Below the pieces are notes generated by a model. The model saw only the letters and a program-made list of their open reading frames with translations, did not search any database and had not been told where the DNA came from. DNA of 64,000 nt from Hemiscyllium ocellatum (taxonomy: Eukaryota): the NCBI RefSeq assembly GCF_020745735.1, contig NC_083409.1, positions 20,470,098-20,534,097 on the forward strand. The letters run 5' to 3'. This document shows positions 20,297 through 63,129 of the stretch, one piece after another; positions within the stretch are counted from its first letter, which is position 1, and every line of letters starts with the position of its first letter. Made by a program: the position numbers and the translations under genes.

Positions 20297-20625
20297 CTAC
20301 ACACATTCTGATCTCCTGATGCTCTTGCTGAGGGGAGAGGGGAGGGTCATGTGGGTGAGGGCACAGGAGAAGCGAGCGTCGGATTCCCAGTCAGACCCAG
20401 AGAGGGTCAGCAGGCTGCTGACACTGTAGGTACTGTCCGAAGCTCGCAGGTAGTTGCTGGTCTGAACCCCGTCCGAAATGACTGCACCATCCTTCTTCCA
20501 CTGCACCTCCAGCTCATCAGGATAGAAGTGATTGGCAAGGCACACCAGGGTGGCAGTGCCCTTGGCATTGACCTGCTCCGGGGAGGGGGGCAGCAGGGTC
20601 AGCTTGGGCTGAGAGTTGTCACGGA
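20297..20625 (-). CDS. IGKC: Ig kappa constant exon (…RDNSQPKLTLLPPSPEQVNAKGTATLVCLANHFYPDELEVQWKKDG…FSCALTHMTLPSPLSKSIRRSECV*)
   Basis: Acceptor tctcttgtctttcAG at 20626-20627; C1-set Ig domain with both Cys, FYP and QWK motifs; C-terminal SECV supplies the H-L disulfide Cys; TAG at 20299-20297. The inferred J-C junction codon A|TC gives Ile. Confidence 0.98.
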
Positions 20626-22620: not shown

Positions 22621-22859
22621 AGTCAACTCAAAGAGAAAGCAAATGGGTTCACTTGCACAGAACGTGAGAAAATGAAAGGCACAGGAGAAGGTGGGAGTCG
22701 TGGTTAGTGATGGGTTTGATTGTTACCAGAAAATAAAAGGAAGGATCAGAATTTGTGAATGTCATATTGTAACAAGGCAATACAGACAGTAGAAATAACC
22801 TAAAGTCTTTGTATGATAACGCATTCGGAATAAGGTAGACAGAGTGATGCCACAAGTTG

Positions 22860-24060
22860 AGGTTCCCAAGGACTTTAAAATCATTAAAGTGACGCAGGGC
22901 TCAGGAGAGGTTAGTAAAGTTTCCAGAATAATTAATAGGACATAGATTATGGAAAGGGTCAGAAAATTAATTTTAGGCACAGTGCATAAGGGGACAACTA
23001 TGAAAAGGAGGGTAGTCAATGCAGGACTGAGGGTGTTGTACCTGAATTCAGGAAGTATCCGAAATGAGGTAAATGAGCTTGTAACACAGATTGGAATTGG
23101 CAGGTTTGATGTTTTGAGTATCACAGAGACCTGGCTGTAAGGGGTTGAGGACTGGGAATGAAATACTCAAGGATGCACATCCGATTGACAGGACATGCTG
23201 ATGGGTAGATGGGGGTGGGGTTACCTTCTTGGTAAGAAATGAAATGAGATCAATCACAAGAAGGGATTTAGAGTTGGAATGCATTCAATCTGTGTGGGTA
23301 GAGTTGAGGAGTTGCAAGGGAGAAAGAGCATGATGAGAACTTAGCACAGGACCCCCCAGCAGCAGTCAGGATATGAGGAAGAAAATAAATCAGGTGATAG
23401 AGAAGGCCCTGCTATAATAGTCATGAGGGACTTCAGTATGCAGGGAGACTGGAAAATTAAATTGTTTGGGGATCTCAAGGGTAGGAATTAATGGAATGCT
23501 TACGACATGGTTTTTAGAGCAGCTTGTGGCAGAGATCACTATGGAACAGGCAATTCTGGATTGGGTGATGTGTATTGAAGCAGACCTGATTAGGGAATTT
23601 AGGGTGAAGGAATCCCTTCGGGGCATTGACCGTAATATGACAGAATTCACCCTGCAGTTTGTGACAGAGAATCTGGAGTCAGTTGTACCGGTAATGCAAT
23701 TAACTTAAGGTAACTACAAAGACATGGGGGAGGAGCTGGCCAGAGCTGGTAAGAAAGGAAGCTGAGCATAAGAGAGAATGGAGCAGCAATGGTAGGAGTT
23801 TCTGGGGGTAATTTGGGAGGCAGAGCAGGAATTTAACCCAAGGAAGAAGAAAGGTACTGAGTGGAGGCCAGGGCAACCATGGCTGATGAGGGAAGTCAGG
23901 GTCAGCATAAAAGCAAAAGAAAAAACATGCAATGTGGTGAAGATTATTGGGAAGCCAGAGGATTGGGAAGCCTTTAAAAACAGCAGAGAGTAACTAAAAA
24001 AAAGGTAAGGATGGGTGTGTAAATAAAATATAAGGGTCAGCGAGTTAGTAACATAAAAGA
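22860..24060 (+). mobile_element. CR1 LINE ORF2 endonuclease fragment
   Basis: LRVLYLNSGSIRNEVNEL…DVLSITETWL; EQAILDWVMC. Confidence 0.85.
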
Positions 24061-24204
24061 GTATTGCAAGAGGTTTTCTTTAGATATATGAAAGGCAAGA
24101 GGGAGTCAATAATAGAAATTGTACCACTGGAAAAGGCAGAAGTAGTAATGGGGAACAAAGAAATGGTGGAAAATGTGCATCGGTGCCTTAAATCAGCTTT
24201 CACA

Positions 24205-24794
24205 GTGGTGTGGCAATGCTGCTCATTTCACAAGTTTGAGTTGTCCTTGGATTTTTTTTTCAAGAGGGGTTGTAAAGGCAGAGGTTCCAATTTGTCTGGG
24301 TTAGGGACTTTGCTCATGGCTAACAGGTACTGCCTAAGGCAACAGTCAGGGAAAAGGCTTTTAGGTTTTATATTAAACACTTGTCCAATAAAAGGAGAGT
24401 GGCCAGTTCTTCCAGTTTGCTGTTTTTGACAAACAGTTGGTTGGAAGCTCCTGGATAAAGAAAGCTGCTGGTGAGAAAGGTTCCCCAATTCAACATTTTC
24501 CAGTGGACTCACTGTCTGAAATTCCTCTCCTGTAAGAACCTTTTTGCCAAGGCTATTACAGCAAATTGGAACAACTCTTTGTCAAGTTACATTTTTTCGT
24601 AAGTTGGGTTTTCAAATAGTTAAATTATTCTAAATTCTGTTTTCTTTTGATTGTAAATAAATACTCTTTTCCTTCAAGCTGAGTGGTTTGGCCAGTTGTA
24701 TCATTCCTGGAATATCCAGGTTACATTTGCTTAACACAATTCGAAAAGGCTGCATTCTTAAAATGTTTAGAAGGGTCTGGCCTGGTCCATAACA
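24205..24794 (+). mobile_element. Probable solo/partial Gypsy LTR in the J-C intron
   Basis: Ends …ggcctggtccataACA with an internal AATAAA (~24656); no TSD found and the 5' edge is uncertain. Confidence 0.4.
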
Positions 24795-24795
24795 A

Positions 24796-27700
24796 TGTCA
24801 CAGAGTCCTACAGCATGGAGACAGGCCATTTGGACCAAACTGGTCCATGCCAACCAAAATGTCCATTTACGCTAATCCTACACTTGGCCCATATCCTTCT
24901 GAATCCTTTCCTTTGCTGTATTTGTCCAAATGCCTTTTAAATGTTATTAATGTACCCACCTCAACCACTTCCACTGGCAGCTCATTCCATATGCGAACAA
25001 TCCTATGTGTAAAAAGGTTGCTCCTCAGGTTCCCTTTTATTCTTTCCCCTCTAACCTTAAACTGATGCGCTCTAGCTCATATTCGCAAACCTTGGGGAAA
25101 AGACCGAGTGAATTCATCCTATCCATGCCTCTCATGATCTTATGAGGTCCTCCCTCAGTCTCCTACACTCTAAAGAAAAAAGTACTCTCCCTTTAACCCA
25201 AACAATTGAATCCTGGCAACATCCTTGCAAATTTCTTCTGCACTCTTTCCAGTTTAATAACATCCTTCCTGGAACAAGGTGACCAAAACTGAACACAATA
25301 TTCCAAGTGTGGCTTCACCAGTGTCCTGCATAACTGCAACATAACTTCCCAACATCTGTAGTCAATGCTTTGACTGATGAAGGGCACTGCAGAAAAAGCT
25401 CTCTTCTCTGCTCTATTCACTGTGACTCCATTTTCAGAGAACTGCTTATCTGAATTCTAAGGACCCTCTGTTCCACTATATTCCTTAAGGTCCTATCATT
25501 CACCATGAAACTCCTACCTTGCTTTCAATTTCCAAAATACAAGACCTCACATTTATCTGTATTAAACTCTATTTGTCATTTCTCGGCCCACTTCCCCAGC
25601 TGAGCAAGGTCCTGCTGCAATTTCTGATAACTGTCCGCACTGTCCACGATGCTGCTTATTTGAGTGTCATCAGCAAACTCACTAACCATGCCTTGTACAT
25701 TCTCATCCAAAACATTGTTATAGATAACAAACAGCAATGGGCTCAGCACTGACCACTGAGGCACTCCACTAGTCACAGGCCTCCAGTACAATAAGGATAC
25801 TTCCCCTATTACCCTGTGCTTTCTACCATCAAGCCAATCGTGTATTCAATTTGCCAGGTCACCTTGGATTCCATGCAATCTAACCTTCCATAAAGCCTAC
25901 CATATGGAACCTTATCAAAGGCCTCACTGAAATCCATATAGACCACGTCTACCATCCTGCCCTCATCAACCTTCCTGGTCAATTCATCAAAGTAACTTAA
26001 CAAATTTGTGAGGCATATTCTCCCACTCACAAAGTCATGCTGACAACTCCTAATCAAATTCACTCTTTCCAAATGCATGTGTATCTTATCTTATCAAACA
26101 ACTTACCCACCACAAATGTTAAGCTTATAATTCCCAGGCTTTTGTTTTTCAGCCCTTTTTGAACAATGGCACAGTCTTCGCTATCCTCCAGTCTTCTGGC
26201 ACCTCACCTGTGGCTAACCATGATGCTTAAATATCAGCCAGTACACCTGACCTTCAAGAGAGTTGGGAGCAGAAGTGAGTGGAAAGGGCATCACTAAGGT
26301 GGAGGGGTTGAGGCAGCTGAAAGGTCTGAAGGTGGATAAATCAGTCAGACCCGATGGACTACACTCCAGAGTTCTGGTGGAGATAGCTAAGGTAATTGTA
26401 GGGCCATTGGCTATGATCTTTCAGAAATCACTGGAGTCAGGAGTGGTCCCAGAAGACTGGAAAATAGTGAATGTAACATCCCTGTTTAAGAAAGGAGGGA
26501 GGCAGAGATGGGACATTATAAGCTGGTTAGCCTGACCTCGGTCATTGGTAAGATTTTAGAGGTCTACCTAAGGGTGAGATTGCAGGTATTTGGAATCTCA
26601 CCCTTAAAGCCTGGTAAAATTGCAACCTGGTAAAATTGGATTGACTCAGCACAGCTTCATCAAAGGGAGGCATGCCTGATAAATCTGTTAGAAATCTTTG
26701 AGGAGGTAACAAGTGAGTTAGACAAAGGAGAGCCAGTGGATGTGATTCATTTGGATTTCCACCAGGCCTTTGACAGGGTACAATAAAGGAGACTGCTAAG
26801 TCAAATAAGAGCCCATGCTGTCAGGGGCAAGGCACTGCGATGTGTAGAGGATTGGCTGGCTGGCACAAAGACGAGAGTAGGGACAAAGGGATTTTTTTCT
26901 GGATGGCAGTTGGTGCTTTGTGGCGATCCGCAGGGATCAGTGGTGGGACCACAACTATTCACATTATCCATTAACAATCTGGATAAGGAACTGAAGATAT
27001 TGTTCATATGTTTGTAGATGACACAAAAATTGGTGAAAGGACAGGTGGAGTTGAGGAAGTGGGGGAGATTGCAGAAGGACTTGGTCAGGCTGGGGGAATG
27101 TGCAAAGAAGTGGCAGGTGGAGTACAATGCGGGGACTTGGGAGGCTAGATACTTTGGTGGGAAGAATAGGGGCACAGACTGTTTTCTAAGTGAGGAAAGA
27201 TTTCAGAAATCTGAAGCACAAAAGTCCTTGCTCAGGTTTCTCTGAAGGTTAACGTGCAGGTTCACCATTGGCTGTTTGAAAGGCAGTTACAATGTTAGCA
27301 TTAACTTTAACGTCAGAGGTGTACTGCTGAGTTTGTATAAGTCTGTCATCAGACCACATTTGGAATTGTGGTCTCCTTATTAAGGAAGGATGTGCTGTCA
27401 TTGGAGAGGGTCCAGAGGAAAAAGAGAGAAAGAATAAGAATGATCCTGGGAATGAAGGGGGTGTCATATAAAGAGTGGTTGAGGATTCTGGATCTGTATA
27501 CAATTGTGTTTAGAAAGATGATGGGGGAATCTTATTGAAACTACAGAATATTGAGAGGCCTGGAGAACATGGAGAAGGTGTTCCCACGAATAGAAGAAAC
27601 TCGGGCCCGAAGGCACAGCCTCAGAGTGAAGAATGATCTGTCAGAACTGAGATAAGGAGGCATTTCTTCAGCCACAGGGTGGTGAATCTGTGGAACTCAT

Positions 27701-27870
27701 TGTCACAGAGGTCTATGGATGCCCCGGTGTTGAGAGTATTTAAAACAGAGACAGATAGGTTCTTAATCAGTAAGGAGATCAAAAGTTAAGAGGAGAATGG
27801 GGTTGAGAAACACATCACATAAGATCAAATGGCAGAGCAGACTCTCTTCTGACTGGCCCAATTCTGCTCC
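24796..27870. mobile_element. Back-to-back CR1 RT/3' fragments (24796-~26200 minus; ~26210-27870 plus)
   Basis: QHDFVSGRICLTNLL…VDVVYMDFSEAFDKVP; SGVPQWSVL…FADDTQ; GPDGLHSRVL…VPEDWKIVNV. Confidence 0.85.
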
Positions 27871-27929
27871 TATATCTTAAGTATTTTGGGTTTATGTAGA
27901 GGTTCCTTGAAACCCTGGAAAACTGGAAG

Positions 27930-28270
27930 TACAGTCACTTAGTGGTTTGCCCTGCTGCCTCACAGCGCTATGGACCCAGGTTTGATTCTAGCCTCGGGTG
28001 TCTGTCTGTGTGGAGTTTGCATGTTCTCCCTGTGCCTGTGTGGGTTTCCTCCGGGTGCTCTGGTTTCCTCCCACAGTCCAAAGCTGTGCAGGTTCGGTGA
28101 ATTGGCCATGCTAAATTGCCCATAGTGCAGGTTAGGTACATTAGTCAGGAGTAAATGTAGGTTAAAAAGGTAGGGGAATGGGTCTGGGTGGGTTACTGTT
28201 CGGAGGGTCAGTGTGGATTTGTTGGACCAAATGGCCTGTTTCCATACTGTAGGAATTATGTGATTCTATG
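27930..28270 (+). mobile_element. HE1-like SINE in the J-C intron
   Basis: tgctgcctcacagcgc…gtgtggagtttgcatgttctccc…ggcctgtttccatactgtagg tail. Confidence 0.85.
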
Positions 28271-28399
28271 GACATTGAAAATACTGGATTGTGGGCCCTG
28301 CTGTTGCTGTTTCTCAAAAGTACTTTGACAAAAGATAACCAGGGAGTGGTGAGAGTGAGCATCAGGTTGCATGAGGGAACTGCTTGTCCTGCTTCCTGG

Positions 28400-30010
28400 A
28401 ATACCATGAGTACAGGAAGTGTGGTCAGTGACAGCAGTTGGAACTCCAGGTTTCGGAGCTTGAGCAGCAGCTGGTGTCAGTGCGGAGCGTCCGTGAGGCT
28501 GAGAGCTCCGTGGAGAGCATGTTTCTAGATGTGGTCACTCTGCAGCTTCAGAGTATGCAGGGAGAGAGGGAATGGGGGAGCAGCAGACAGTCCAAAAGGA
28601 TCAGGCAGCTGATCCCGTGAGTGCATCCCACTCTCCAACCTGGATTCAGTTCAGAATCCTGATGAGAATGATGGTTCATCTGGGGAGTGCAGCCAGAGCC
28701 AAGTCCCTGGCATCACGGGGGTTCAGCTGTACAGGGGGGCACAAGAAAGACTGGAAGAGCGATAGTGAGAGGAGATTCGAGAGTGAGGGCATCGATAGGT
28801 GTTTCTGCCGCTGCAGATGGGAATCCAGGATGGTGTGTTGTCTCCCTGGTGCCAGGGTCAAGGCTGTCACTGAGCAGCTGCAGAGCATCCTGAGTGGAGA
28901 GGGGGAACAGGCAGCAGTGGTGGTCCACATCGGTCCCAGTGACAGAGGGAGAAAAGAGATGTAGTCCTGCAGTCAGAATTTAGGGAGTTCCAGAGGGAAT
29001 TAGCAGCAGGAGCTCAAAAGTAGGAATTTCCAAGATTACCCCCAGTGCCCCACGCAAGTGAGAATAGAAAGAGGACTGTGGAACTGAAAAGACAGTCCAG
29101 GAGGAAGGTCTTTCGATTATTTTAACATTGGGACTGGCTTTGGGGGGAGATGGACATGTACAGACCAGACGGGTTGCTCCTGAACAGACCTGGGACTGAG
29201 TTCCTTTGGGGTGATTTACTCGAGCTGTTGGAGGGGGTTTAAACTTTCTTGGCTGGCCTGTGGGATCCAGGAGCTAATACCAGAGAGGAACACAGAGGTG
29301 CACAGAATCCTGGGAGAGATAGATAGCACCCAGAATAAGGAATAGAACTTCTTACCCAGTTTCAGTGTGAGGGAGAGAGAGTAATAAATTCTAAATCAAG
29401 GTCACTGTGTAAGGGTGGGACTGCACGGAGTGTTGGAAATAAGACTGGGAAGGTACAGCCACAGAGTGTTAAGTGGAAATCTGATGTGTGTCTCTCACAT
29501 AGGAACATAAGATAATAAGAACATTAGAAATAGGAGCAGGAGTGGGCTATCTGACCCATCAAGGATGAGGGACAAGAGTTATGAAGATAGACTGAAGACG
29601 TTGGGACTGTTTACCTCAGAGAAGAGAAGGCAGAGAGGAGATTTGATCAAGAAATTCAAAATCAGGAGGGATCTGAACAGAGTAATCCAGGAGAAAATGT
29701 TCCCACCTGAGAAAGATTTGAGAGAGAGAGGCCATGGATTGAAAGTAATTGGTAAAAGAAGCAAAAGTGAGATGAGGGAAAAACATTTTCAGCCAGTGGG
29801 TGGTTAAGGTGTGGAATGCACTGCCTGAGAGTGTGGTGGAGGCAGCTTCAATTGAAACATTCCGAAGGGAATGAGACTGTTATTTAAAAAGGAACAATGT
29901 GCAGGGTGACAGGGAGAAGGCAGGAGAATGACACTCAGTGAATTGATCATTCGGAGAGCCAGTTGAGACAGGATGGGCGGAACGGCCTCTGTATGCACTG
30001 TAACAACTCT
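28400..30010 (+). mobile_element. CR1 ORF1 (esterase domain) fragment followed by CR1 3' fragment
   Basis: MELQVSELEQQL coiled coil; VCCLPGARVK…VVVHIG SGNH-esterase motif; RQRGDLI…RGHGLK 3' region. Confidence 0.8.
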
Positions 30011-30458
30011 GTGATTGTGTGATTGAGCAGAGTTAAAGCTGGGGGAGGTGGGAACTCGGTGTCTCACTGTGCTGCTGCTGCTGCTGCTGAGGTCAGTGAG
30101 ATCAGAGACTGGGACAGGGAGCCAGAGCTCACATCAAACTCTGCCTGTGTCCGTCACACTGAGACTGGCAGGAGGCTGCTCACTGATTTCACTCCATGCT
30201 GCAGGAATGGGACCACAGGCTGCAAATGGACAGAGCTCCTCCACACAGTGAGTAAAACTTACTGACTTTCATCTTGCTGCTTAAAGGGGGCAATAGGACG
30301 ACAGAAATACAGCTGGGCATCCTGTCAGACACAGTGCTCCTCAATCAACTATTTCATTCACTGCAGCTCCCCACTAACACCTTCAACAATTCAGCATTTG
30401 TGATTTAGAAAGTTTCAGTATTGACAGGGTTAATAACGGAGGATTGAGGTTTACTTAC

Positions 30459-30493
30459 TCAGTCTGAGTTTGGTTCCTTTACCGAACGTGTAC
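30459..30493 (-). CDS. IGKJ: Ig kappa J segment (YTFGKGTKLRL)
   Basis: FGxG motif directly after the heptamer; GTAAGT donor at 30458-30453 in phase 1, compatible with the C exon. Confidence 0.97.
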
Positions 30494-30532
30494 CACAGTG
30501 AGAGCTCCCAGTGTAGAGGCTGTACAAAAACC
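30494..30532 (+). other. J recombination signal sequence, 23-bp spacer (CACAGTG-23-ACAAAAACC)
   Basis: Perfect heptamer 30494-30500, 23 nt spacer 30501-30523, perfect nonamer 30524-30532; faces the V RSS, so joining is deletional. Confidence 0.98.
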
Positions 30533-30939
30533 TCAGCTCTCTGCTTCCCTCCATCACTCTCACCCTCTCCCTGTCTCCCAGTCTGTCGATCACTCTCACC
30601 CTCTTTTTGCCCCTATCAGTCTCTCCCTCATTCATGTGTCTTTCTGTCTCTGCCTCTGGGTTGTGAACTTTATTTTTTGTTGTTAAATCATGCAGATGTT
30701 CTTCACATGTGGCCATGCAGTGGAAGAGGGAAACCTGAGGCCTCCAGTGAGCGGTGGACACCACAGGGACTGGAGTGTGTCGTGGACAGTGACAATCCCA
30801 GCATGGGGTAATTTGTTCAGTTTCATTTAACTATAACTGTGGGATATGGCAGTTCAGGCAGTGGGACTGTGTGTCCATTATCATGCACTTTTTAAAACCG
30901 TGTGTGTGTCAGTACAGGAGGTGATTCTGTGTGCTTTGA

Positions 30940-30967
30940 GGTTTTTGTATGGCTCTGTATCATTGTG
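30940..30967 (-). other. V recombination signal sequence, 12-bp spacer (CACAATG-atacagagccat-ACAAAAACC)
   Basis: Heptamer variant CACAATG at 30967-30961, exactly 12 nt spacer, perfect nonamer at 30948-30940. V-12/J-23 is the kappa configuration. Confidence 0.97.
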
Positions 30968-31266
30968 GCGAGGGTTGCTGTAATCTTGCATACAGTAATA
31001 GTCAGCGACATCCTCATTCTGAACGTTGCTGATTGTCAGGGTGAAACTGGTTCCTGATCCACTGCCAGTGAATCGATCGGAGACTCCTGTGAATCGATTT
31101 GTTGCAGCATAGATCAGGAGAGAGGGTTTCTGACCTTCCCGCTGCTGGTACCAGCTAACATAGTTGCTCACAGATTGACTGGCCGTACAGGTGATGGTTG
31201 CAGTCTGGCCCAGTCCCACTGAGAGCACCGGGGGAGACTGAGTCATGATGATGTCCCCACTGATAC
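30968..31266 (-). CDS. IGKV: Ig kappa V exon, germline, open ([100 protein letters not shown])
   Basis: Pyrimidine tract and CAG acceptor at 31267-31269; conserved Cys23, Trp41 (WYQQ) and DYYC; kappa-type CDR3 ending in Pro; no stops; RSS immediately follows. Confidence 0.98.
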
Positions 31267-31452
31267 CTGAGGGGTCAGAGAGAAACACAGTGAAGTCAGA
31301 ACTGTCACAGAAAGAGACGGTCAAATGAGAGATTGTTGGAGACACTGAGCATTCCTCTGGTTTCAGCATTTTCCCTTCAGTCACAAGTCAGTGGAATTGG
31401 AGTGAAATGGAGAGCAGCGAAAGATTCAAGGTGGAAGGAGAGAGATTTGTAC

Positions 31453-31501
31453 CTGTGACACAGAATGCCAGGGGCCAGATCAGCTGGATGTGTGAAATCA
31501 T
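31453..31501 (-). CDS. IGKV: Ig kappa light chain leader exon (MISHIQLIWPLAFCVT-G)
   Basis: ATG at 31501, 49 nt (16 codons + 1), hydrophobic peptide, GT donor (GTACAA) at 31452; the phase-1 splice restores Gly with the V exon. Confidence 0.92.
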
Positions 31502-31560
31502 GGTGTGTGCTCCTGTCCCTGTGCCTGGTTCCTGATAAACTCTCCCTTCACTGGGCTCTG

Positions 31561-31658
31561 CTTTATAAAGCTGCAGCCTGTGAGAGTCTGACTGGGTGTT
31601 CCTCAGTATGTAAATGGCATCAGTCAGGGAGGGCCACGTCAGCCCCTCGCACTTCCTC
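31561..31658 (-). promoter_or_regulatory. V-kappa promoter: TATA box, variant octamer, PU box
   Basis: TATAAAG ~60 nt above the ATG (31561-31568), ATTTACAT at 31615-31608 where Ig V promoters carry ATTTGCAT, TGACGTGG (CRE-like) ~31634-31641, GAGGAAGTG at 31658-31650. Confidence 0.7.
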
Positions 31659-33010: not shown

Positions 33011-33439
33011 TCTACCCCACTAATGGATGTTAACCCTTGACCCCAGAAGCATGTCTTCTCCTGGAGTAAAGGTACATTTCCACATTGACCAGGTTTTGGT
33101 ATCTCTCAGGAAGATGGACAGATTCTTGTTAAATGAAGGACAGTTCTGTGCTGTTGGCCTATTCTCACTGGGGACTGGTTTGGACACAAACCTCATTCCA
33201 TGAAGGCCCAGCAGAGAGAGGAGATCCTCAGGCCATCAGTGTGAGCTGGAGGGACAGCACAGGCTCTGACCCACTGACCCATCCTGTCCATTCACAACAT
33301 GTTCCAATCCCTTCCCCTTTCCTTCCCCTTCCGTGATCAGTTTCTGAGTCAGGGTGTTTTATTTGGATGACGCTTGGACCATCACACATTTACAACAGAA
33401 AGGAACTGAACCCCACACCCACCATGGTGTCCATGATGC

Positions 33440-35649: not shown

Positions 35650-36420
35650 TGTGTAAAGGTGAGACTAAGCGTGTAAATGCTGTCATTTCATGGAGCAATC
35701 CAGTCAGTCCCACCCCCTCTCCTACTCGACCCCCAGAGCCTTGCAGGTTTATTTCCATCAAGAGCCCATCCAATCTGCCATTGCAATAACTGAGTGTCTT
35801 CACCTGCCTCACCTGAATGGGCACTAACTTCCAAGTCATTACCAATTGCTGCTAAAGAAAACATACTTCCTGACATCCCATATCTTTTGTCCAACAAAAT
35901 GCAAGGTAATCTCAATGTGAAGATGGGATTTTGTCTCCACACGGACTGTGCGGTGGTCACCCTTACTGATACTTTCATGGACAGAAACATCAGCAGCAGG
36001 CAGGTTGGTGAGGGTGATGGTGAGTATGTTTTTCCCTCTTATTGGTTCCCTCACCACCTGCCCCAGGTCCAGTCGAGCAGCTGAATTAGGTGGAGCGTGA
36101 CCACCTTGCTCAGCAATGATGCTTCTGAGCAGGTCTTGATGGTGGACTTTGAAGCCCCTTACTCAGAGTATATCCTGCATCTTTCCCTCCCTCAGTGCTC
36201 CCTCCAAGTGTTGTTCAACATGGAGGAGGACTGACTGCTCAGTTGAAGTTGGAGCGGAGGGCGGTGCTATGTGGTAATCAGCAGGAGGTTTCCTTCCCCA
36301 TGTTTGACCAGCTGTCATGAGGCTTCATGGGTTCCATAGTTAATGGTGAGGACTCCCAGGGCAATCCCTTTCCGACTATACACACCACTGTGTTGCCTCC
36401 CCTGCTTGGTCTATCCTGCC
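35650..36420 (-). mobile_element. L2/Crack-like LINE endonuclease fragment
   Basis: VREPIRGKNILTITLTNLPAADVSVHESISKGDHRTVRVETKSHLHIE; same family and orientation as 63130-64000. Confidence 0.7.
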
Positions 36421-36591
36421 AGTTAAAAACTGAATGAAGGAACAATTCTGTGCAGGTTTCACAGCTTGGAGACAGAGCTGCTGCTGGATTCTGTTTCTGA
36501 TCGCCGAGTGCAGGCGTGTGTGTTTGTGAGAGAGTGACTGTCCTTTTTTCCATCACTGTGCTGTTTCTGAAAAGAAAAATCCCAGAACCAG

Positions 36592-37490
36592 CCTCCTGTG
36601 CTGTCAGGTTCCAGGGAGTGCAGACAGTTCACAGTTTTCTCCCATCTCAGTAACAAACACCCAGCTGCTCCCAGCTCCTTCTTTCACTTCCTCTTTTGGT
36701 GAAGTTTCAACCTTGCGATCTGACAGTCTTTGCAGTTATTTTTTACACTGGGGCTTTCTGCTGTGGTCAGAACCTCTAATAATAAGTGTCCAATCTGTGA
36801 CAATCACAGCAGCTAAGAGCAGTCAGGACTGAGGAGCCAGGCTCACTGGGAAACACATTGGGAAGATCAAAGCCATCCCCTTCAGATCCTGGTATAAACT
36901 CCTTCCCTCTCCCTGAGCACTGTCTGCTGCTCAACCAGACTCTTTACAAACTTGGCCTCATCTTTGGGGCCGATCTGAGCACCATACCCTCCATCTCACA
37001 AAGATCAGCCACTGAAAATCTCTGTCATGTGTATGGGACTCCAAACATGACCATACCAATGTTGTGCTTGCACACATCACAGCCACTGCCCTCCGTAACC
37101 TTCAGCTCATTCCAAATTCTGCTGCCCATATCCAAACTCACATCAAATCCCATTCCTCCATCCCCCTGCACCCTGTGCCTACATTGGCTCCTGGTCCAGC
37201 AACACCTCGATTTTCAAATTCTCATCCTTGTTCTCAAGTCCCTCCCTGTCCTCCACTCTCCCTATCTCTGTAACCTCCTCCAAACTGCCTCACTCAGTGT
37301 GATCAACAATCTTGGATATATGGCTGTCTATTCTTTCATCCAAGTCATTTAGAAATATCGTGAAATGCTGAGGTTCCGGCCCAGTTCCCTGGGGACACCA
37401 CTATCCACATTTTAGTCATTGGAGAGCACACACATTATCCATCCTCTCTGTCTCCTACCTCCAAACTAATTCCTGACCAAAGATAAATAC
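36592..37490. repeat. Left copy of a ~0.9 kb inverted duplication (mirror of 61130-62048)
   Basis: 36600-36860 matches the reverse complement of 61780-62040 without gaps; ORFs 36858..37352+ and 61445..61783- both start MGRSKPS. Confidence 0.95.
36660..36795. promoter_or_regulatory. Candidate B-cell enhancer, copy 1 (E-box, EICE, RUNX, MEF2, CCAAT)
   Basis: CAGCTG 36662-36667, TTTCACTTCC (=GGAAGTGAAA) 36682-36691, TGTGGT 36762-36767, CTAATAATAA 36776-36785, CCAAT 36790-36794. Motif-based only. Confidence 0.55.
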
Positions 37491-37499
37491 TTTTCTCTA

Positions 37500-39900
37500 A
37501 CTGGCGAGAATGGGAGAAAGCAGAGGGACATAGTGGAAGGATACTTGTCAGACTGGAGGCCTGAGTCTAGTGGAGTGCCTCAGGATTGATGCTGGGTCCA
37601 TTACTGTTTGTTATCAATATCAATGATTTAGAAGACATTCCATTAGCTGGTATTGTGGACAATGAGGAAGGTTATCAGATATTGTAGCAGGACCTTGATC
37701 AACTGTGGAAGTGGGAAAAGAAATGATAAATTGAGTTTAATGTAGATAAATATGAGGACTTGCATTTTGGAAAGTTAAATCAAGGTAGGAGTTTCATGGT
37801 GAATGGTAAGGCCATAAGGACTGTAGTGGAACAGTGGGATCTCGGAGTTCAGGTGCACAGTTCCCTGAAAGTTGAGTCACAGTTAGACAGGGCAGTGAAG
37901 AAAGCTTTTGGCACACTGGCCGTCATCAGTCAGGGCACTGGGTGTAGAAGGTGGGAAGTTATGTTTCAATTGTACATGATGTTGGTGAGGCTGCACTTGG
38001 AGTATTGTGTTCAGTTTTGGTCACCTTGTTATATGAAGGATATTATTAAACTGGAAAGAGTGCAGAATAAATTTACAAGGATGTTGCCAGGTTTCAACAT
38101 CTGAGTTTTTGGGAGAGGTTGGACAAGCTAGGACATGTTTCTTAAGAGTGTCGGAGAGTAAAGGGGAATCTTTTAGAAGTGTATAAGATCTTGAGAGACA
38201 TGGATTGGGTGAATGCACTCAGTCTTTGTCCCAGGGTTGGGGAATCAAGGACTAGAGGGCATCAGTTGAAGGTTAGAATAAACGGGAACCTGAGGGGCAA
38301 CATTTTTACGCAGAGGGTGGTACTCGTATGGAATGAGCTGCCAGCTGAAGTGATTGAGGCTGGTACATTAACAACATTTAAAAGGCATTTGGACAAATAC
38401 ATAGATAGTATGTAATTTGAAGGATATGGGCCAAATGGAGGGAAATGGGGTTAGTGTGGGTGGATATTTTGGTCAGCACGGTCCAGTTTGGGCCAAAGGG
38501 CCTGTCCCTGTGCTGTAGGACTCGATGACTCTGCGACTCTATAATTCCATATGTTTCCATGTTTATGAACAGTCTCTCAAACATAGAAACAGAGGAACTA
38601 GGAGCAGGAGGAGGCCGTTCAGCCCTTCAAGTCAGCTCTGCCAATCAATATGACCATGGCTGATCATCCAACTTAGTCTCCTGTTCCCACTTTTTCTCCA
38701 TAACCTTTAATCCCTTTCGCCTTCTTGAAAACATTTAATATTTTGGGCTCAATTGCTTTCTGTGACAAAATATTCCACTAGCTTCCCACTCTCTGGCTAA
38801 AGAAATGTCTCCTCATCTCAGTCTGAAATGGCCTTTCCCTTTTCTTTAAACTGTGATTCCTGGTTCTGGACTCTCCAGTCATCAGGAACACAATTCCCGT
38901 GCTTACCGGTCTTGTCCTGTTAGGATTTTACAGGTTTCAATGTGTTTCCTCTCAAATTTCTAAACTCCAGTGAATATAATCCTAACAAATCCAGTTTCTC
39001 ATCAGATCTAAATGCTGTCCTCCCAGGAATCAGTCTGGTAAACCTTCGCTGCCCTCCTTCCACAGCCAGAACATCCTTCTTCAGATAAGGAGTCCAAAAC
39101 TACCCACGACAGAATCATAAAATCATACAGTATAGAAGAGGCCCTTCAGCCCATTAACTGTGTACCAGCCAAACTACACTAAACCTACACCAGTCCCACT
39201 TTCCAACATGAGGCCCATAGCTTGAATGTTCTGATATTTCAACTGCTCACCCAAGTACTTTTTAAAGTTTGTGAGGTTTCCCACCTCAACTACTTTCCCA
39301 GACTGTGTATTCCAGACCCCCCACCATCCTCTGGGTCAAAAACACTTTCCTCAAAACATCTTGAAACCTCCTATCTTTGACATTGAATGTGAACCAACTT
39401 GTTATTGACCCTCCCAAGAAGGAGAACAGCTGCTTTCTCTCCTCCCTGTCCATTCCCCTCATCACCTTATACACTTCGATCAGGTGCCCCTCCACCTTCT
39501 CTGCTCTGAAGAAAACAACCCGAGATGATCCAATTTCTCTTCATCACTGAGAGGTTCCATCCCACACAACATCCTAGTGATTCCCCTCTGCACCCCATCC
39601 AGTGCAATCACATCCTTCCTACAATGTGGTGACCTTAACTGCACACAGTACTCCAGCTGTGGCCTAACCAATGTTCTGCTTAACTGCAGCATATCCACCT
39701 GCTTTTATAGCCAATACCTGACATGACAAAGGCAAGTGTCCCCTATGCCTTCTTAACTGCTCTGTTAACCTGTCTTGCCACATTCATTGATCAGTGGAGA
39801 AGCACCCAAGATCACTCTGTTCTTTTGAGCTTCCTCAGTTCAAAGAACAAAGAGCAATGAAAATTATAGCACAAGAACTGGCCCTTTGGCCCTACTAGCC
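37500..39900. mobile_element. Cluster of CR1 3' fragments in both orientations
   Basis: LVRLHLEYCVQFWSPCY…ERVQNKFTRMLPG (37760..38104+); minus-strand copies at 39286-39698. Confidence 0.8.
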
Positions 39901-45200: not shown

Positions 45201-46079
45201 TCTCATTTTTGACCACAGAACCGCCGATCTACTCCCCTTACAAAGTCCAAACAAACCATATCCATGGGCCCCCCTTATCAAATCCACTTGCTACATCCTC
45301 ACACAATTCCAGTCGATTTCCCTTTCGACAATCCATGCTGACTCTGTCCAGTTCTGTCACTGTTTTCAAAGTGCTAAGCTATAAAATATTTTATAATGAA
45401 CTTGGGCATTTTCTCCACTGCTGATTTCTGGCTAATTGGTCTAAAATTTCTTATTTTCCCTCTCTCTCTCTTTCAATAATTTTGTTAAATTAACTCCCTC
45501 CACTCTGTAGGATCTATTCCACAGTTGAGAAACAGATAACCATCAATGTTTCTAATATTTTACAACCACTTCCTGAAGCACTCCTGAAAATAGATTATTT
45601 GGCCCTGCTGATTTAACACACTTTAGTTTTCCCAGAACCATTTTCCCCCAACAACTGACTTCCTTCAGCTCCTTCCTCTGATAAAACTCCAAGTTCACCA
45701 ACATATCTGAGATTTATTTGAGAATTAATTTGTGCAGAAAGATCCAGAATATGTTTATCTGTCATCTCTTTGTTCCAACGATAACATTATAACACTTGTG
45801 TGGAACTTCCTTGTATGTCATCTGGACGTCCATATAAACAACACATTCCCTTATCTCACACATTAGTGACCTCGTTAAAACATGTAACCAGGTTAATTAA
45901 AGATATCTGACCCTTTTTAAATCCATGCTGACTTACTCTGATCTGGTCATATTTGTCAGACATTCTGTCTCTAAAACCAGATTCAACTACTTCCCAACAA
46001 TAGACATTCAATAGAGATGTTCATTGTGAGTGAGGTGAGTAAACAGTGAGCACTGACATGATGGGCTGAACAGCCTCCT

Positions 46080-49000
46080 CCTAGAGTCACAGAGTCAAAG
46101 AGATGTACAGCATGGAAACAGACCCTTCGGTCCAACTTGTCCATGCTGACCAGACATCCCAACCCAATCTAGTCCCACCTGCCAACTCCTGGCCCAGATT
46201 CCTCCAAACCCTTTCTATTCATATACCCATCCAGATGCCTTTTAAATGTTGCAATTGTACCAGCCTCCACCACTTCCTCTGGCAGCCCATTCCATACTCG
46301 CACCACCCTGTGCGTGAAAAAGTTGCTCTTCAAGTCCCTTTTATATCTTTCCCCTCTTACCCTAAACCCATGCCCTCTATTACTGGACTCCACCAGCCCA
46401 GGGAAAAGACTTGGTCTCTTTGCCCTATCCATGCCCCTCATAATTTTATAAACCTCTGTAAGGTCACTCCTCAGCCTCTGACACTCCAGGGAAAACATCC
46501 CCAGCCTATTTACCCTCTCCATATAGCTTAAATCCTTCAACCCGGTAACATCCTTGTCAATCTTTTCTGAACCTTTTCAAGTTTCACAATATCTTTCTGA
46601 TAGGAAGGAGACCAGAATTGAATGCAATACTCCAAAAGTGTCCTGGTGACCTCCCAATTCCTGTACTCAATACTCTGACCATTAAAGGAAAGCATACCGA
46701 ATGTCTTCTTCATTATCCTATCTACCTACAACTCTACTTTCAAGGAGCTATGAACCTGCACTCCAAAGTCTCTTTGTTCAGCAACACTCCCGAAGACCTT
46801 ACTGTGTATAAGTGTATAAGTCCTGCTAAGATTTGCTTTCCCAAATGCAGCACCTTGCATTTATCTAAATTAAACTCCATCTGCCATTCCTCAGCCCAAT
46901 GGCCCATCGGATCAAGATCCTGTTGTAATCTGAGGCAACCTTCTTCGCTGTCCACTACATCTCCAATTTTGGTGTCATTTGCAAACTTACTAACTCTACT
47001 GCCTATGTTCATATCCAAATCATTTATGTAAATGACAAAAAGTAGTTGACCCAGGACCAATCCTTATGACACTCCACTGGTTACAGGCCTCCAGTCTAAA
47101 AAACATCCCTCCACCACCACCCTCTGTCTTCTACCTTTGAGCCAGTTCTGTATCCAAATGGCTAGTTCTCCTGTATTCCATGAGATCTAACCTTGCTAAC
47201 CTGCCTCCCATGGGGAACCTTGTCGAATGCCTTACTGAAGTCCATTCAGATCCTGTCTAACGTTCTGCCTTCATCAATTCTTTCTGTTACTTCAAAAAAC
47301 TCAATCAAGTTTGTGAGACATGATTTCCCATGCACAAAACCATACTGACTATCCCTAATCAGTCTTTGCCTTTCCAAATATATGGAAATTCTGTCCCTCA
47401 GGATTCCTTCCAACAACTTCCTCACAACCAACGTCTGGCTCACTGGTCTACAGTTCCCTGGCTTGTCCTCACCAACTTTCTTAAATAGTGGCACCAATTA
47501 GTGAACCTCCAGTCTTCTGGCACATCATCTGTGACTATTGAGGATACAAGTATCACAGTAAGAGTCCCAGCAATCACTTCCCTAGCTTCCCACAGAGTTC
47601 TAGGGTACACCTAATTAGGTCCTGGGGATTTATCCACTTTTATGCATTTCAAGACATCGAGCACCACCTCGTCTGAAATACGAACGTTTTTCAAGATATC
47701 ACCATCTATTTCCCTACATTCTATATATTCAATATCCTTCTTCACAGTTAAACTGAAGCAAAATACTCATTTGGTATCTGCCCCATCTCCTGCGGCTCCA
47801 CACAAAGGTTGCCTTGCTGATCTTTGAGGGACCCTATTCTCTCCTTAGTTACCCTCTTGTCCTTAATGTATTCATAAAACCCCTTTACGTATTCTCCTTA
47901 ACTCTATTTGCCAAAGCTATCTCATGTTGTTGCCCTCCTGATTTCCCTCTTAAGTATACTCCTACTGCCTTTGTATCCATCTAAGGATTCACTAAATCTA
48001 TCCTGTCTATCCCTGACATATGCTTCATTCTTTTTCTCAACCAAACCCTCAACTTCTCTCACCATCCAATATTCCCTACACCTACCAGCCTTTCCTTTCA
48101 CTGTAACTAGAATATACTATCTCTGGACTCAAATTATCTCATTTCTGAAGGCTTCCCATTTTCCAGCTATCCCTTTACCTGCGAGCAACTGCCCCCAATC
48201 AGCTTTTCAGAGTTCTTGCCTGATACTGGCAAAATTAGCCTTCCTCCAATTTAGAACTTCAACTTCTGGATCTGGTCTATACAGAAACCCACGCAGACAC
48301 AGGGAGAATGTGCAAACCCCACACAGACAGTTGCCTGAGGTGGGAATTGAACCCGGATCTCTCGCACTGTGAGGCAGCAGTGCTAAACACTGTGCCACCG
48401 TGCCTGATACTGGCAAAATTAGCCTTCCTCCAATTTAGAACTTGTACACACTTAACAAATTCCTCTCCATCTAAACCCTAAACACTATGGCAGTCCCAGT
48501 CTATGTTTGGAAAGTTAAAATCCCCTACTGTAACCACCCCATTATTCTTACTGATAGCTGAAATCTCCTTACAAATTTGATTCTCAATTTCCCGCTAGCT
48601 ACTGGAGGGGGGCTATAATATAATCCCAACAAGGTGATCATCCCCATCTTTTTTCTCAGTTCGATCCAAATAACTTCCCTGATGTATTTCTGGGAATATC
48701 CTCCCTAAGTACAGCTGTAATGCTATCCCTCATCAAAAATGCCACTCTCCCTCCTCTTGTGCCTCCCTTTCTGTCCTTCCCGTAGCATTTGTATCCTAGA
48801 ACATTAAACAGCCAGTCCTGTCCATCCCTGAGCCATGTTTCTGTAATTGCTATGATATCCCAGTCCCATGTTCCTAACCACGCCCTATGTTCATCTTCCT
48901 TCCCTGTTAGGCCTCTTGCACTGAAATAAATGCAGTTTAATTTATCAGTCCTACCTTGTTCTCTGCTTTGTCCCCACCTGCCCTGATTGTTTGACCTGCC

Positions 49001-61129: not shown

Positions 61130-62048
61130 AATGCATTTACCTTGGGTCAGGAATGTGTCTGTCTAGGAGACAGAGAGAAAGGATAATGTGCATGTGTTCC
61201 AATGAGCCAGATGTAAGTAGTGGTATTCCCAGGGATCTGTGCTGGGACCTCAGCTTTTCACGATATTTCTCAATGACTTGGATGAAGAAACAGAGAGCCA
61301 TATATCCAAGATTATTGATCACACTGAGTGAGGCAATTTGGAGGAGGTCACAGTGATAGGGAGGGTGGAAGAACAGGGAGCAGATTGAGAACAAGGATGA
61401 GAATTTGAAAATCGAGGTGTTGCTGGACCAGGAGCTTATGTCAGTCAGTGAGGATTGTGGTGGTTATGGTGGGGTGGGGAGGCGTGGGCAGGAGTATGGG
61501 GTGGACTTGGGGTGAGTTTGAACACAGACAGCAGAGTTTGGGATGAGCTGATGTTTACGGAAGTCAGTGGCTGTGATGTGGGCCTGGATAACATTAGAAT
61601 GATCACAAAAACATGGTTGAGATTTTCAGTGGCCGATAATTGCGATGTGGAGGACTTGGGCCTCAAACCAGCCCCAAAGATGAGGCCAAAGTTATAAAGA
61701 GTCTGGTTGAGCAGCAGACAGTGCTCAGGGAGAGGGATGGAGCTTGTACCAGGAGCTGAAGAGGATGGCTTTGATCTTCCCAATGTGTTTCACAGTGAGC
61801 CTGGCTCCTCAGTCCTGACTGCTCTTAGCTGCTGTGATTGTCACTGATTGGACACTTATTATTAGAGATTCTGACCACAGCAGAAAGCCCCAGTGTAAAA
61901 AATAACTGCAAAGACTGTCAGAGCACAAGGTTGAAACTTCACCAAGAGAGGAAGTGAAAGAAGGAGCTCGGAGCAGCTGGATGTTTGTTACTGAGACGGG
62001 AGAAAACTGTGAACCATCTGCACTCCCTGGAATCTGACAGCACAGGAG
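61130..62048. repeat. Right copy of the ~0.9 kb inverted duplication
   Basis: Reverse complement of 36592-37490; includes the motif-rich unique segment plus shared LINE-derived flank. Confidence 0.95.
61847..61979. promoter_or_regulatory. Candidate B-cell enhancer, copy 2
   Basis: ATTGG 61847-61851, TTATTATTAG 61856-61865, ACCACA 61874-61879, GGAAGTGAAA 61950-61959, CAGCTG 61974-61979. Confidence 0.55.
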
Positions 62049-63129
62049 GAGGCCATTCAGCCTATCATGTCTTTGAATGACCCAGTTAATCCCACTGCTC
62101 CCCTCTCTTTCCCCGTAACCCAGCAAATCTTTCCTTTACAGCTCAATCTCCAATTTCCCTCTGACATTCCCTCATGTCCACAGCGTGAGACTGCCCTGAA
62201 CCTGGGCTTCAAATTGGCATTGCATTCATTCATTGGGAGACAAACTGCCTGGGCTGGGAAATGGAACTCAGGATCCTGAACATTCCCTCTCCCCTCCTGA
62301 GGAACACTTCATTTGGTTTTGCATATTCACTTGTGGGAAGTGGGCTTCACCAGCTGGGCCAACATTTTTTACCCTGTCTCTAGTTGCCCTGGAGTAGGTG
62401 GTGGGAAGCTGCCATCTTGAATTGTTATCGTCCACAAGCTGTAAGTTGACCCACAATGCCAGCATTTTGACCCAGCAAGGCTGAGGGATCAGCGACATAT
62501 TTCCAAGTCCGGATGCTAAGCTTTTTCGAGGGGAACTTGCAGCTCACAGTGTTCCCATGTATCTGCTGCTCTTGTTCTAAATGGAAGTGAACGTGGGTTT
62601 GGAGGGAAACCAAAAGAACTGCAGATGCTGTAAATCTGAGACAAAAATAGAAAGTGCTGAAAAAGCTCAGCAGGTCTGGCAGCATCTGTGAAGAGAAATC
62701 AGAGTTAATATTTCATGCTCAACCCGAAATGTTTACACTGATTTCTCTCCAAGATGCTGCCAGACCTGCTGAGCTTTTCCTGAAATTTCTACTTTTGTCC
62801 ATGGGTTTGGAAGGTGCTACCTGAAGATCAGTGATGAATTTCTGCAGTGCATCTTATCGATAATACACACTGCTGCTATGGAGCGTCAGTGACAGTGAGT
62901 TTGGATGCTTTGAGAATGCGATGCCAATCAAGGAGTTTGCTTTGCTCTGGATGGTATCAAGCTTTTTGAGTGGATAAGAAAGACATAGGATACAATAGAC
63001 AGAGATAGGAAAGGTTTCAAGGGATATGTGTGAAATGCAGGCAAATAAGATGAGTTCACTTCAGAAAACCTGGTCAGCATGTAGAAGTTTGGCTTAAGGG
63101 TTTGTTTCTGTGCTGTATGACTCTGTGAC

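What the first reader, a model, noticed from the sequence alone, without database searches (positions are those of the whole stretch)
36600..36860. Conserved 260-bp non-TE module with EICE + E-box + RUNX + MEF2 + CCAAT: candidate shark kappa enhancer
Seen: the two copies differ at 12 of ~260 positions with no gaps (hand count), while the shared LINE-derived flank decays to roughly 70-80% with indels. None of the differences hits GGAAGTGAAA, CAGCTG, TGTGGT, CTAATAATAA or CCAAT. Established: GGAAnnGAAA is the PU.1/IRF4-8 composite element of the mammalian Ig kappa 3' and lambda enhancers, and E2A, RUNX and MEF2 are B-lineage factors. Inference: a per-cluster upstream enhancer under purifying selection. 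I do not know of a described counterpart in sharks.
Basis: partly seen in the sequence, partly recalled or inferred. Interest (0 to 1): 0.8.

Follow-up and report, generated by a model that had tools for sequence, protein, structure and literature searches.

The report
Conserved block upstream of shark kappa genes
A 270-base non-coding block about 5 kb upstream of shark antibody kappa light-chain genes is kept as well as the genes' own promoters and carries the binding-site set of mammalian and bird light-chain enhancers, so it is a credible but untested candidate for an antibody-gene switch in cartilaginous fish.

Summary
Window 36592-36860 and its inverted copy 62049-61781 differ at 12 of 269 positions with no gaps, and none of the five motifs is hit. 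The shared flank falls to 78-82% identity with indels.

The block lies 5.09 kb upstream of an unrearranged kappa V-J-C cluster on the minus strand. It sits between the 3' end of a CR1-like LINE and a 5'-truncated L2 fragment, and shows no detectable LINE homology itself.

I fetched three further copies from Chiloscyllium punctatum kappa loci. Two lie 4.7 and 6.4 kb upstream of a V gene in the same orientation; the third is inverted and its V gene is off the contig.

Within the main kappa family the core (36592-36950) is 93-95% identical, against 78-82% for the old TE DNA on both sides. In an ancient paralogous locus it is 75-82%, against 71-75%. This tracks the V promoter/leader (91-94% and 85%).

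The E-box is kept in 5/5 copies, the PU.1/IRF composite site and RUNX site in 4/5, and the MEF2 site and CCAAT box in 3/5.

The best reading is a per-cluster B-lineage cis-regulatory module (confidence 0.55). Ancestral gene conversion without function is not excluded, and no activity data exist. The scan has noted the same kind of block at two other places in this genome.

The parts
36592..36860 (+). Module copy A: a 269-nt non-coding block, 5.09 kb upstream of the V leader ATG (31501) of cluster A
   Evidence: It is 95.5% identical to copy B and 94.3% to C. punctatum L002. It shows no LINE HMM match, no Rfam match and no protein homolog.
61781..62049 (-). Module copy B, inverted. It faces a second kappa gene reported about 2.6 kb beyond the window end.
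   Evidence: establish the copy. The second gene is known only from earlier scan note s1-200225 and was not checked here.
36592..36606 (+). Remnant of the 3' terminus of a CR1-like LINE, at the V-proximal edge of the module
   Evidence: B 62071-62035 matches LINE 3' ends at 46055-46082, 38605-38633 and 60650-60686.
36627..36700 (.). Sub-block 1, the most deeply conserved part. It holds an RSS-like heptamer/nonamer pair with a 16-nt spacer, the E-box CAGCTG (36662-36667), and the ETS-IRF composite GGAAGTGAAA (36682-36691, minus strand).
   Evidence: L001a and L001b are 87% identical here against 68% overall. The E-box is kept in 5/5 copies and the composite site in 4/5. No indel falls between the two sites in any of the five copies.
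36729..36794 (.). Sub-block 2: a kB-like GGGGCTTTCT (36750-36759), RUNX TGTGGT (36762-36767), MEF2-type CTAATAATAA (36776-36785) and CCAAT (36790-36794)
   Evidence: It is 93-100% identical between B and the deep paralog L001a in the 30-nt windows starting at 36727-36757. RUNX is kept in 4/5 copies, MEF2 in 3/5 and CCAAT in 3/5.
36861..36950 (+). Extension of the high-identity tract into the start of the L2 fragment
   Evidence: Identity is 92-96% among A, B and L002. The weak collinear L2 HMM hit starts at about 36879.
36879..37300 (+). 5'-truncated L2-type LINE fragment (C-terminal third of ORF2), present in all copies and so older than the cluster duplications
   Evidence: Significant phmmer, tblastn and HMM matches to the LHWLP...PPYLC region at 37040-37313, with only weak collinear hits from 36879. 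Identity among A, B and L002 is 78-91%.
37318..37400 (-). Antisense reverse-transcriptase fragment of another LINE, shared by A, B, L002 and L001b
   Evidence: tblastn of RT-bearing proteins hits B 61230-61301 on the plus strand.
30940..31615 (-). Cluster A V gene: octamer-like ATTTACAT (31615-31608), TATAAA (31567-31562), leader (31501-31453), V exon (31266-30968), and an RSS with a 12-nt spacer (30967-30940)
   Evidence: Pfam V-set match at 3.5e-18. The sequence was read directly.
30459..30532 (-). J segment with an RSS carrying a 23-nt spacer
   Evidence: Read directly from the sequence.
20297..20623 (-). C-kappa exon of cluster A
   Evidence: ORF. tblastn with shark kappa chains gives 95-99% aa identity to hemiscylliid C regions.

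Best explanation
The block is a conserved non-coding element that belongs to the kappa light-chain cluster unit. Most probably it is a B-lineage cis-regulatory module, meaning an enhancer or enhancer-like element. It would act on the V promoter about 5 kb downstream of it.

Proposed mechanism (inferred, not shown):
- An ETS factor of the PU.1/SpiB type and an IRF4/8-type partner bind the composite site GGAAGTGAAA.
- An E protein binds the CAGCTG site 14 nt away.
- A second sub-block 60-100 nt further on binds RUNX, MEF2-type and perhaps Rel factors.
- Because the element is upstream of V, V-J joining does not remove it or change its distance to the promoter.
- In head-to-head cluster pairs, each cluster carries its own copy in the shared intergenic region.

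What is shown: position, orientation, copy association, conservation and motif retention. What is inferred: factor binding and enhancer activity.
For: 1. The block is associated with clusters and not seen elsewhere. Five copies were found in 124 kb of shark DNA. Copy A lies 5.09 kb, L001a 4.7 kb and L002 6.4 kb upstream of a kappa V gene in the same orientation. Copy B lies about 4.6 kb from a V gene according to an unchecked note. L001b is inverted and its V gene lies off the contig. No other copy was found.
2. It forms a conservation peak. Among A, B and L002 the core is 93.3-94.7% identical. The adjacent ancient-TE DNA is 78-81% on the right and 81.7% on the left (Fisher p = 1e-7 to 1e-12). 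In the A-L002 comparison it is the best-conserved segment of the whole V-upstream region, ahead of the V exon at 84%.
3. It tracks the known functional promoter/leader region. That region is 90.5-93.5% identical in the main family and 84.8% in the deep paralog L001. The module is 94% and 80-82%.
4. L001 is a very old paralog, with a C region only 78.7% identical in amino acids. That is lower than the identity to other shark orders, 82-84%. Even so, L001a keeps the composite site, the E-box and the RUNX site with unchanged spacing, and the 30-nt windows starting at 36727-36757 are 93-100% identical.
5. The combination of composite site, CAGCTG, RUNX and MEF2 within 270 nt occurs in the window only at the two copies, and in 0 of 300 shuffles.
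6. The same lexicon (E-box, MEF2, PU.1-IRF4, NF-kB) defines the Ig-lambda enhancers of human, mouse and chicken. Those enhancers also show low conservation between the sites (PMC3972084).
7. Other identities were tested and not supported. There is no LINE homology in any of the five copies, no Rfam hit and no covariation. Indels that are not multiples of three argue against coding sequence.
Against: - No functional data of any kind exist.
- All comparisons are between paralogs. An ancestral gene-conversion tract covering the core would give the same profile.
- The tree shape differs between core and flank. The ratio of A-B divergence to A-L001b divergence is about 0.2 in the core and about 0.7 in the flank. 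Simple uniform constraint does not predict this.
- L001b shows no excess conservation (77% against 73%, p = 0.23) and has lost three of the five motifs outright, with the composite site altered as well.
- The high-identity tract overruns into L2-derived DNA.
- Motif columns are only weakly better kept than other columns in the deep paralogs. By hand count there are about 10 changes in 74 motif cells, against about 21% elsewhere.
- GGAANNGAAA alone is not enriched in the window (6 found, 3.8 expected).
- The motif set was chosen after seeing the sequence.
- Whether the Chiloscyllium loci are really another species rests only on C-exon identity.
Confidence: 0.55

Rival explanations
1. Concerted evolution without function. 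The core was homogenised among main-family kappa clusters by gene conversion in an ancestor. It therefore coalesces more recently than its flanks, and the motifs are incidental.
For: - The excess identity is confined to the A/B/L002 group. The deep paralogs L001a and L001b show little or none.
- Core and flank give different tree shapes.
- The tract does not respect the boundary with the L2 fragment.
- Structural markers group the copies differently from sequence. A pairs with L001b, and B with L001a and L002, by V-proximal flank type. By core sequence, A, B and L002 group together.
Against: - The same tract limits recur in all three pairwise comparisons, including a copy on a different contig and probably in a different species.
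- A and B are no closer to each other than to L002 (5.3%, 6.7% and 5.3%), so there is no sign of recent exchange within the locus.
- The known promoter shows the same kind of profile.
- L001a keeps a stretch of 30-nt windows at 93-100% identity despite about 20% overall divergence.
Confidence: 0.2
2. The block is a functional cis element of another kind. It could be a promoter of an upstream germline or non-coding transcript, a boundary or insulator between divergently oriented clusters, or mainly a somatic-hypermutation targeting element of the DIVAC type rather than a transcriptional enhancer.
For: - The conservation and cluster association are the same as for the main reading.
- The copies lie in the intergenic region between head-to-head clusters.
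- Ig enhancers with this motif set target hypermutation with little effect on transcription in the DT40 assay (PMC3972084).
- A CCAAT box and a T-rich stretch are present.
Against: - No TATA or initiator context and no conserved splice donor were seen, though I did not search for them systematically.
- I did not look for a CTCF-type motif in the block.
- CCAAT is lost in two of five copies.
Confidence: 0.15
3. The block is unrecognised transposon sequence with no host function. For example, it could be the 5' part of the same rare L2 element after an internal deletion.
For: - It is contiguous with the L2 fragment in every copy.
- This L2 family has no other copy in the window, so the absence of dispersed module copies says little about this particular family.
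- From memory only, a weak resemblance in the L2 reading frame may reach back to about 36820-36860.
Against: - An HMM built from 25 L2-type RT plus C-terminus proteins finds nothing upstream of about 36879 in any of five copies.
- The module ORF has no protein homolog.
- A TE origin would not explain why this part is kept three to four times better than the rest of the same fragment.
Confidence: 0.1

Closest known systems
Ig-lambda enhancers of mouse (E-lambda 2-4 / 3-1), human and chicken
   Same: The site set is the same: an E-box, a MEF2 site, and a PU.1-IRF4 composite element of the form GGAAnnGAAA. There is possibly also a Rel-type site. The size is about 200-300 bp. The sites are conserved while the sequence between them drifts (PMC3972084).
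   Different: Those enhancers lie downstream of the C genes; this block lies 5 kb upstream of V. There is no sequence homology beyond the motifs. The order and spacing of sites could not be compared here. The kB-like site matches only 9 of 10 positions. Activity is unknown.
Mouse Ig-kappa 3' enhancer core (PU.1 / NF-EM5 = IRF4 site with an adjacent E2A site)
   Same: An ETS-IRF composite site sits a short, fixed distance from an E-box. The synergy of Pip/IRF4 with E47 at that enhancer is recalled from memory and was not checked here.
   Different: The position is 3' of C-kappa in one large translocon locus, rather than one copy per small V-J-C cluster. No homology was tested.
Teleost Ig enhancers (catfish and zebrafish IgH E-mu-3', Atlantic cod light-chain enhancers)
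   Same: They are enhancers of Ig genes in fish, and some sit in cluster-type light-chain loci. This is recalled from memory and was not checked here.
   Different: They are described as lying downstream of C and as relying on E-box and octamer motifs. No sequence comparison was made.

Membership tests
Ig light-chain enhancer (E-kappa-3' / E-lambda type) | ETS-IRF composite element GGAAnnGAAA | tested here: met
   GGAAGTGAAA is present in A, B, L002 and L001a. L001b has GGAAATGAAG.
Ig light-chain enhancer (E-kappa-3' / E-lambda type) | E-box for E2A-type proteins close to the composite site | tested here: met
   CAGCTG lies 14 nt from the composite site in 5/5 copies, and no indel falls between the two sites in any copy.
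Ig light-chain enhancer (E-kappa-3' / E-lambda type) | MEF2 and NF-kB sites (lambda type) | tested here: inconclusive
   A YTAWWWWTAR match is present in 3/5 copies. The kB-like GGGGCTTTCT matches 9 of 10 consensus positions and is kept in 4/5 copies.
Ig light-chain enhancer (E-kappa-3' / E-lambda type) | Position in the J-C intron or downstream of C | tested here: not met
   The block lies 4.7-6.4 kb upstream of V.
Ig light-chain enhancer (E-kappa-3' / E-lambda type) | B-cell-specific enhancer activity and factor binding | not testable with these tools
   This needs reporter assays, EMSA or ChIP, and ATAC-seq or H3K27ac profiling.
LINE (L2 or CR1) derived sequence | Homology to LINE ORF2 or to LINE terminal sequences | tested here: not met
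   The L2 HMM and tblastn give no hit in 36607-36860 in any of five copies. Only the first ~15 nt resemble a CR1 3' end, and L2 homology starts at about 36879. No repeat library was available.
LINE (L2 or CR1) derived sequence | Dispersed copies unrelated to gene context | tested here: not met
   Across 64 kb of window and 60 kb of C. punctatum loci there are only the five copies, all within kappa V-upstream DNA. This is a small sample.
Recombination signal sequence | Heptamer and nonamer separated by 12 or 23 nt | tested here: not met
   CACAGTT and ACAAACACC are separated by 16 nt.
Structured non-coding RNA | Rfam match or covarying helices | tested here: not met
   No Rfam match at E <= 1. 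The RNAalifold covariation term is +2.4 and many pairs are broken.

The most novel reading that the evidence does not exclude
Each shark kappa cluster, or each head-to-head cluster pair, carries its own upstream enhancer built from the same PU.1/IRF, E2A, MEF2 and RUNX lexicon as tetrapod light-chain enhancers. That would mean this regulatory logic predates the split between cartilaginous and bony vertebrates. It would also give the physical handle by which one cluster among dozens is activated, rearranged and hypermutated independently.
Probability: 0.4. Interest if true: 0.75.

Novelty: new variant of a known kind. Interest (0 to 1): 0.55.

Why it matters
How sharks choose and activate one of many small antibody gene clusters is an open question. 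The heavy-chain exclusion study (PMC2435157) proposes that a promoter-enhancer complex forms only rarely. I found no report of an Ig enhancer in a cartilaginous fish in the library I could search.

A defined 270-bp candidate with named sites makes the question directly testable by open-chromatin profiling and reporter or hypermutation-targeting assays. If it is active, the light-chain enhancer site set dates back to the origin of jawed-vertebrate immunity. It would also show that this set can work from upstream of V.

Tried and rejected
- Direct-repeat search missed the second copy because it is inverted. blastn found it.
- Pfam on the open reading frames across the module and the flank gave nothing relevant.
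- A word-based protein search with the 105-aa ORF spanning copy B gave no hit.
- A full HMMER search with the flank ORF gave a single L2-type hit. That hit seeded a set of L2 RT plus C-terminus proteins.
- tblastn and an HMM built from those proteins find the L2 C-terminus in the flank but nothing in the module.
- My impression, from memory, that the L2 frame continues into 36820-36860 and to a degenerate YADD near 36738 was not supported statistically. I keep it only as a caveat.
- Rfam gave no match.
- RNAalifold gave no covariation, so a structured RNA is rejected.
- A coding exon is rejected because L001a and L001b carry indels of 1 and 8 nt.
- An RSS is rejected because the spacer is 16 nt.
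- I tested whether sites that vary within A/B/L002 are also the ones changed in the L001 copies. The association was positive in both core and flank, so it does not discriminate.
- Fetching kappa loci of Hemiscyllium, Cetorhinus, Scyliorhinus and the new Chiloscyllium assembly failed because the sample files were too large.
- L003, L004 and L005 are too short upstream of V to contain the block.

Full report
**Observation.** blastn of the region against the window shows that 36592-37495 is repeated once, inverted, at 62049-61128. Identity is 83% over 936 columns with 10 gap openings. An ungapped comparison gives 12 mismatches in 36592-36860 (269 nt, 95.5%) and 8 more in 36861-36970. After that there are dense mismatches and indels of 12 and 31 nt. 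The second copy is inverted, and the high-identity tract extends to about 36950.

**Context.**
- Cluster A lies on the minus strand and is an ordinary unrearranged kappa cluster.
  - Octamer-like ATTTACAT and TATAAA; leader 31501-31453; V exon 31266-30968 (Pfam V-set 3.5e-18).
  - RSS with a 12-nt spacer; J with an RSS carrying a 23-nt spacer at 30532-30459.
  - C exon at about 20623-20297.
- Copy A of the block is therefore 5.09 kb upstream of the V start codon.
- An earlier scan note (s1-200225) reports a germline-joined kappa gene about 2.6 kb past the window end. That would put copy B about 4.6 kb upstream of a second, oppositely oriented cluster. I could not check this.
- The C exon is 99% identical in amino acids to a Hemiscyllium ocellatum kappa chain and 95-97% to Chiloscyllium punctatum chains. 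The window is therefore probably hemiscylliid and probably not C. punctatum, but this is not proven.

**What flanks the block.**
- The V-proximal side:
  - In B, L002 and L001a it is the 3' end of a CR1-like LINE.
  - The terminal motif of that LINE overlaps the first ~15 nt of the block. It matches other LINE ends in the window at 46055-46082, 38605-38633 and 60650-60686.
- The distal side:
  - It is a 5'-truncated L2-type LINE. A full HMMER search with the flank ORF found one protein with the LHWLP...PPYLC C-terminal motif.
  - Relatives of that protein, 25 of them carrying RT plus C-terminus, match A at 37040-37313 by tblastn and HMM. Weak collinear hits in B and L001b start at about 36879.
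  - An antisense RT fragment of another LINE follows at about 37318-37400.
- The block itself:
  - No copy of 36607-36860 gives any LINE match.
  - The ORF that spans the block has no homolog.
  - Rfam finds nothing.
- So the block is a roughly 250-nt island between two ancient LINE fragments. I had no shark repeat library, so an unrecognised TE origin is not excluded.

**More copies.** A protein search with the V ORF returned shark kappa chains. DNA could be fetched only from the older C. punctatum assembly. Three loci matter here:
- L002 carries the block at 3268-3615, 6.4 kb upstream of its V gene. It is 94.3% identical to A.
- L001 carries it at 4843-5296, 4.7 kb upstream of its gene. It is 76.5% identical over 459 nt, and 82% over the first 237 nt.
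- L001 also carries an inverted copy at 71-1644. This copy is collinear with window 35673-37232, so it runs through the A/B boundary at 36592.

So the edge of A/B homology is a later rearrangement, not the edge of the ancestral unit. Each locus has one copy with the A-type V-proximal flank (A, L001b) and one with the CR1-end flank (B, L001a). The divergent cluster pair therefore looks like the unit that was duplicated. The core has no other match in the window or in the 60 kb of fetched loci.

**Conservation.**

| Comparison | Core 36592-36950 | Right flank | Left flank |
|---|---|---|---|
| Among A, B, L002 | 93.3-94.7% | 78-81% | 81.7% (B-L002 only) |

These figures come, with Fisher p = 1e-7 to 1e-12.
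- In the A-L002 comparison the block is the best-kept segment of the whole upstream region.
  - It is ahead of a second block at 33056-33339 (92.3%).
  - It is ahead of the promoter/leader (91.5%) and the V exon (84%).
- Against L001 the picture is weaker.
  - L001a is 80-82% identical in the module.
  - L001b is 75-78%, against 71-75% in the flank. For L001b this gives p = 0.23.
- L001 is a very old paralog.
  - Its C region is 78.7% identical in amino acids to the window's C region.
  - That is lower than the identity to lamniform, carcharhiniform and heterodontiform kappa C regions, 82-84%.
- The promoter/leader, a known functional non-coding region, behaves the same way: 90.5-93.5% in the main family and 84.8% in L001. 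The block tracks the promoter rather than the TE background.

**Motifs across the five copies**.
- The E-box is kept in 5/5, the composite site in 4/5, RUNX in 4/5, MEF2-type in 3/5 and CCAAT in 3/5.
- No indel falls between the E-box and the composite site in any copy.
- Two sub-blocks stand out.
  - 36627-36700 is 87% identical even between L001a and L001b, which are 68% identical overall.
  - The 30-nt windows starting at 36727-36757 are 93-100% identical between B and L001a.
- A kB-like GGGGCTTTCT at 36750-36759 is kept in 4/5 copies.
- The four-motif combination within 270 nt occurs only at the two window copies and in none of 300 dinucleotide shuffles. GGAANNGAAA alone is not enriched (6 found, 3.8 expected).
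- These motif statistics are post hoc.
  - The sparing of motifs by the 12 A/B differences is not significant. About 1.7 hits are expected.
  - In the deep paralogs the motif columns are only slightly better kept than the rest.

**Selection or conversion?** The ratio of A-B divergence to A-L001b divergence is about 0.2 in the core and about 0.7 in the flank. The two partitions therefore do not differ by a simple rate factor. Either the core was homogenised among main-family clusters in an ancestor, or constraint differs between lineages.
- Against recent conversion: A and B are no closer to each other than either is to L002 (5.3%, 6.7% and 5.3%).
- Also against it: the tract limits coincide in all three comparisons.
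- With paralogs only, the two explanations cannot be separated. Orthologous clusters between species would decide it.

**Other readings tested.**
- A structured RNA is not supported. The covariation term is positive and many pairs are broken.
- A coding exon is not supported, because L001a and L001b carry indels of 1 and 8 nt.
- An RSS is not supported. The heptamer-like and nonamer-like sequences are 16 nt apart.

**Comparison with known systems.**
- The site set matches the Ig-lambda enhancers of human, mouse and chicken. In those, an E-box, NF-kB, MEF2 and PU.1-IRF4 sites are conserved while the intervening sequence is not. Those sites are needed for hypermutation targeting (PMC3972084).
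- The position differs. Those enhancers lie downstream of C, whereas this block lies upstream of V, one per small cluster.
- The shark heavy-chain exclusion paper invokes rare formation of a promoter-enhancer complex without naming an element (PMC2435157).
- Two library searches found no description of an Ig enhancer in cartilaginous fish. That is an absence in the searchable library, not proof.

**Relation to the scan.** Two earlier notes on other DNA of this genome (s1-216793 and s1-228462) describe the same kind of block upstream of other kappa clusters. Their follow-ups reached a similar reading. I treated them as leads. I confirmed independently that the block recurs at other clusters and in C. 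punctatum, with fixed spacing between the E-box and the composite site.

**Verdict.** The block is a real conserved non-coding element associated with kappa clusters. It is most likely a B-lineage regulatory module (0.55). A non-functional conversion tract (0.2), another regulatory role (0.15) and unrecognised TE sequence (0.1) remain as rivals.

Noticed in passing
window 33040-33350: A second conserved non-coding block lies 1.55-1.85 kb upstream of the V start codon. It is 92.3% identical to L002 and 87% to L003, and is still alignable in the deep paralog L001. The run GGAACATGTTGTGAATGG is invariant in all five clusters compared.
   Followed up: partly
window 36630-36661: A heptamer-like CACAGTT and a nonamer-like ACAAACACC are separated by 16 nt, which is neither 12 nor 23. 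This is the most deeply conserved stretch of the block. It also fits a forkhead-type RYAAAYA core.
   Followed up: partly
window 36592-37495 with 62049-61128; L001 71-1644 with 4843-5296: In both loci the two block copies are head to head. One copy has the A-type V-proximal flank and the other has a CR1-end flank. This suggests that a divergent pair of kappa clusters, not a single cluster, was the ancestral duplication unit. The copies are about 24 kb apart in the window and about 3 kb apart in C. punctatum L001.
   Followed up: partly
L001 10001-14428 (C. punctatum BEZZ01000502.1): This is a compact kappa-like cluster whose C region is only 78.7% identical in amino acids to the window's C-kappa. 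That is less than the identity to kappa C regions of other shark orders (82-84%). It is probably an old kappa sub-isotype.
   Followed up: no
window 35892-36234 and 63624-63958: A repeat (71% identical, same strand) with a long open frame lies on the V-proximal side of both block copies, but in opposite relative orientation. These are probably independent insertions of one TE family. A short match also occurs at L001 13886-13977.
   Followed up: no
window 20297-31615: V and J are about 430 bp apart, but the J-C intron is about 9.8 kb long and filled with LINE fragments (24800-27200). That is much longer than in the C. punctatum L001 cluster, whose whole gene spans 4.4 kb.
   Followed up: no
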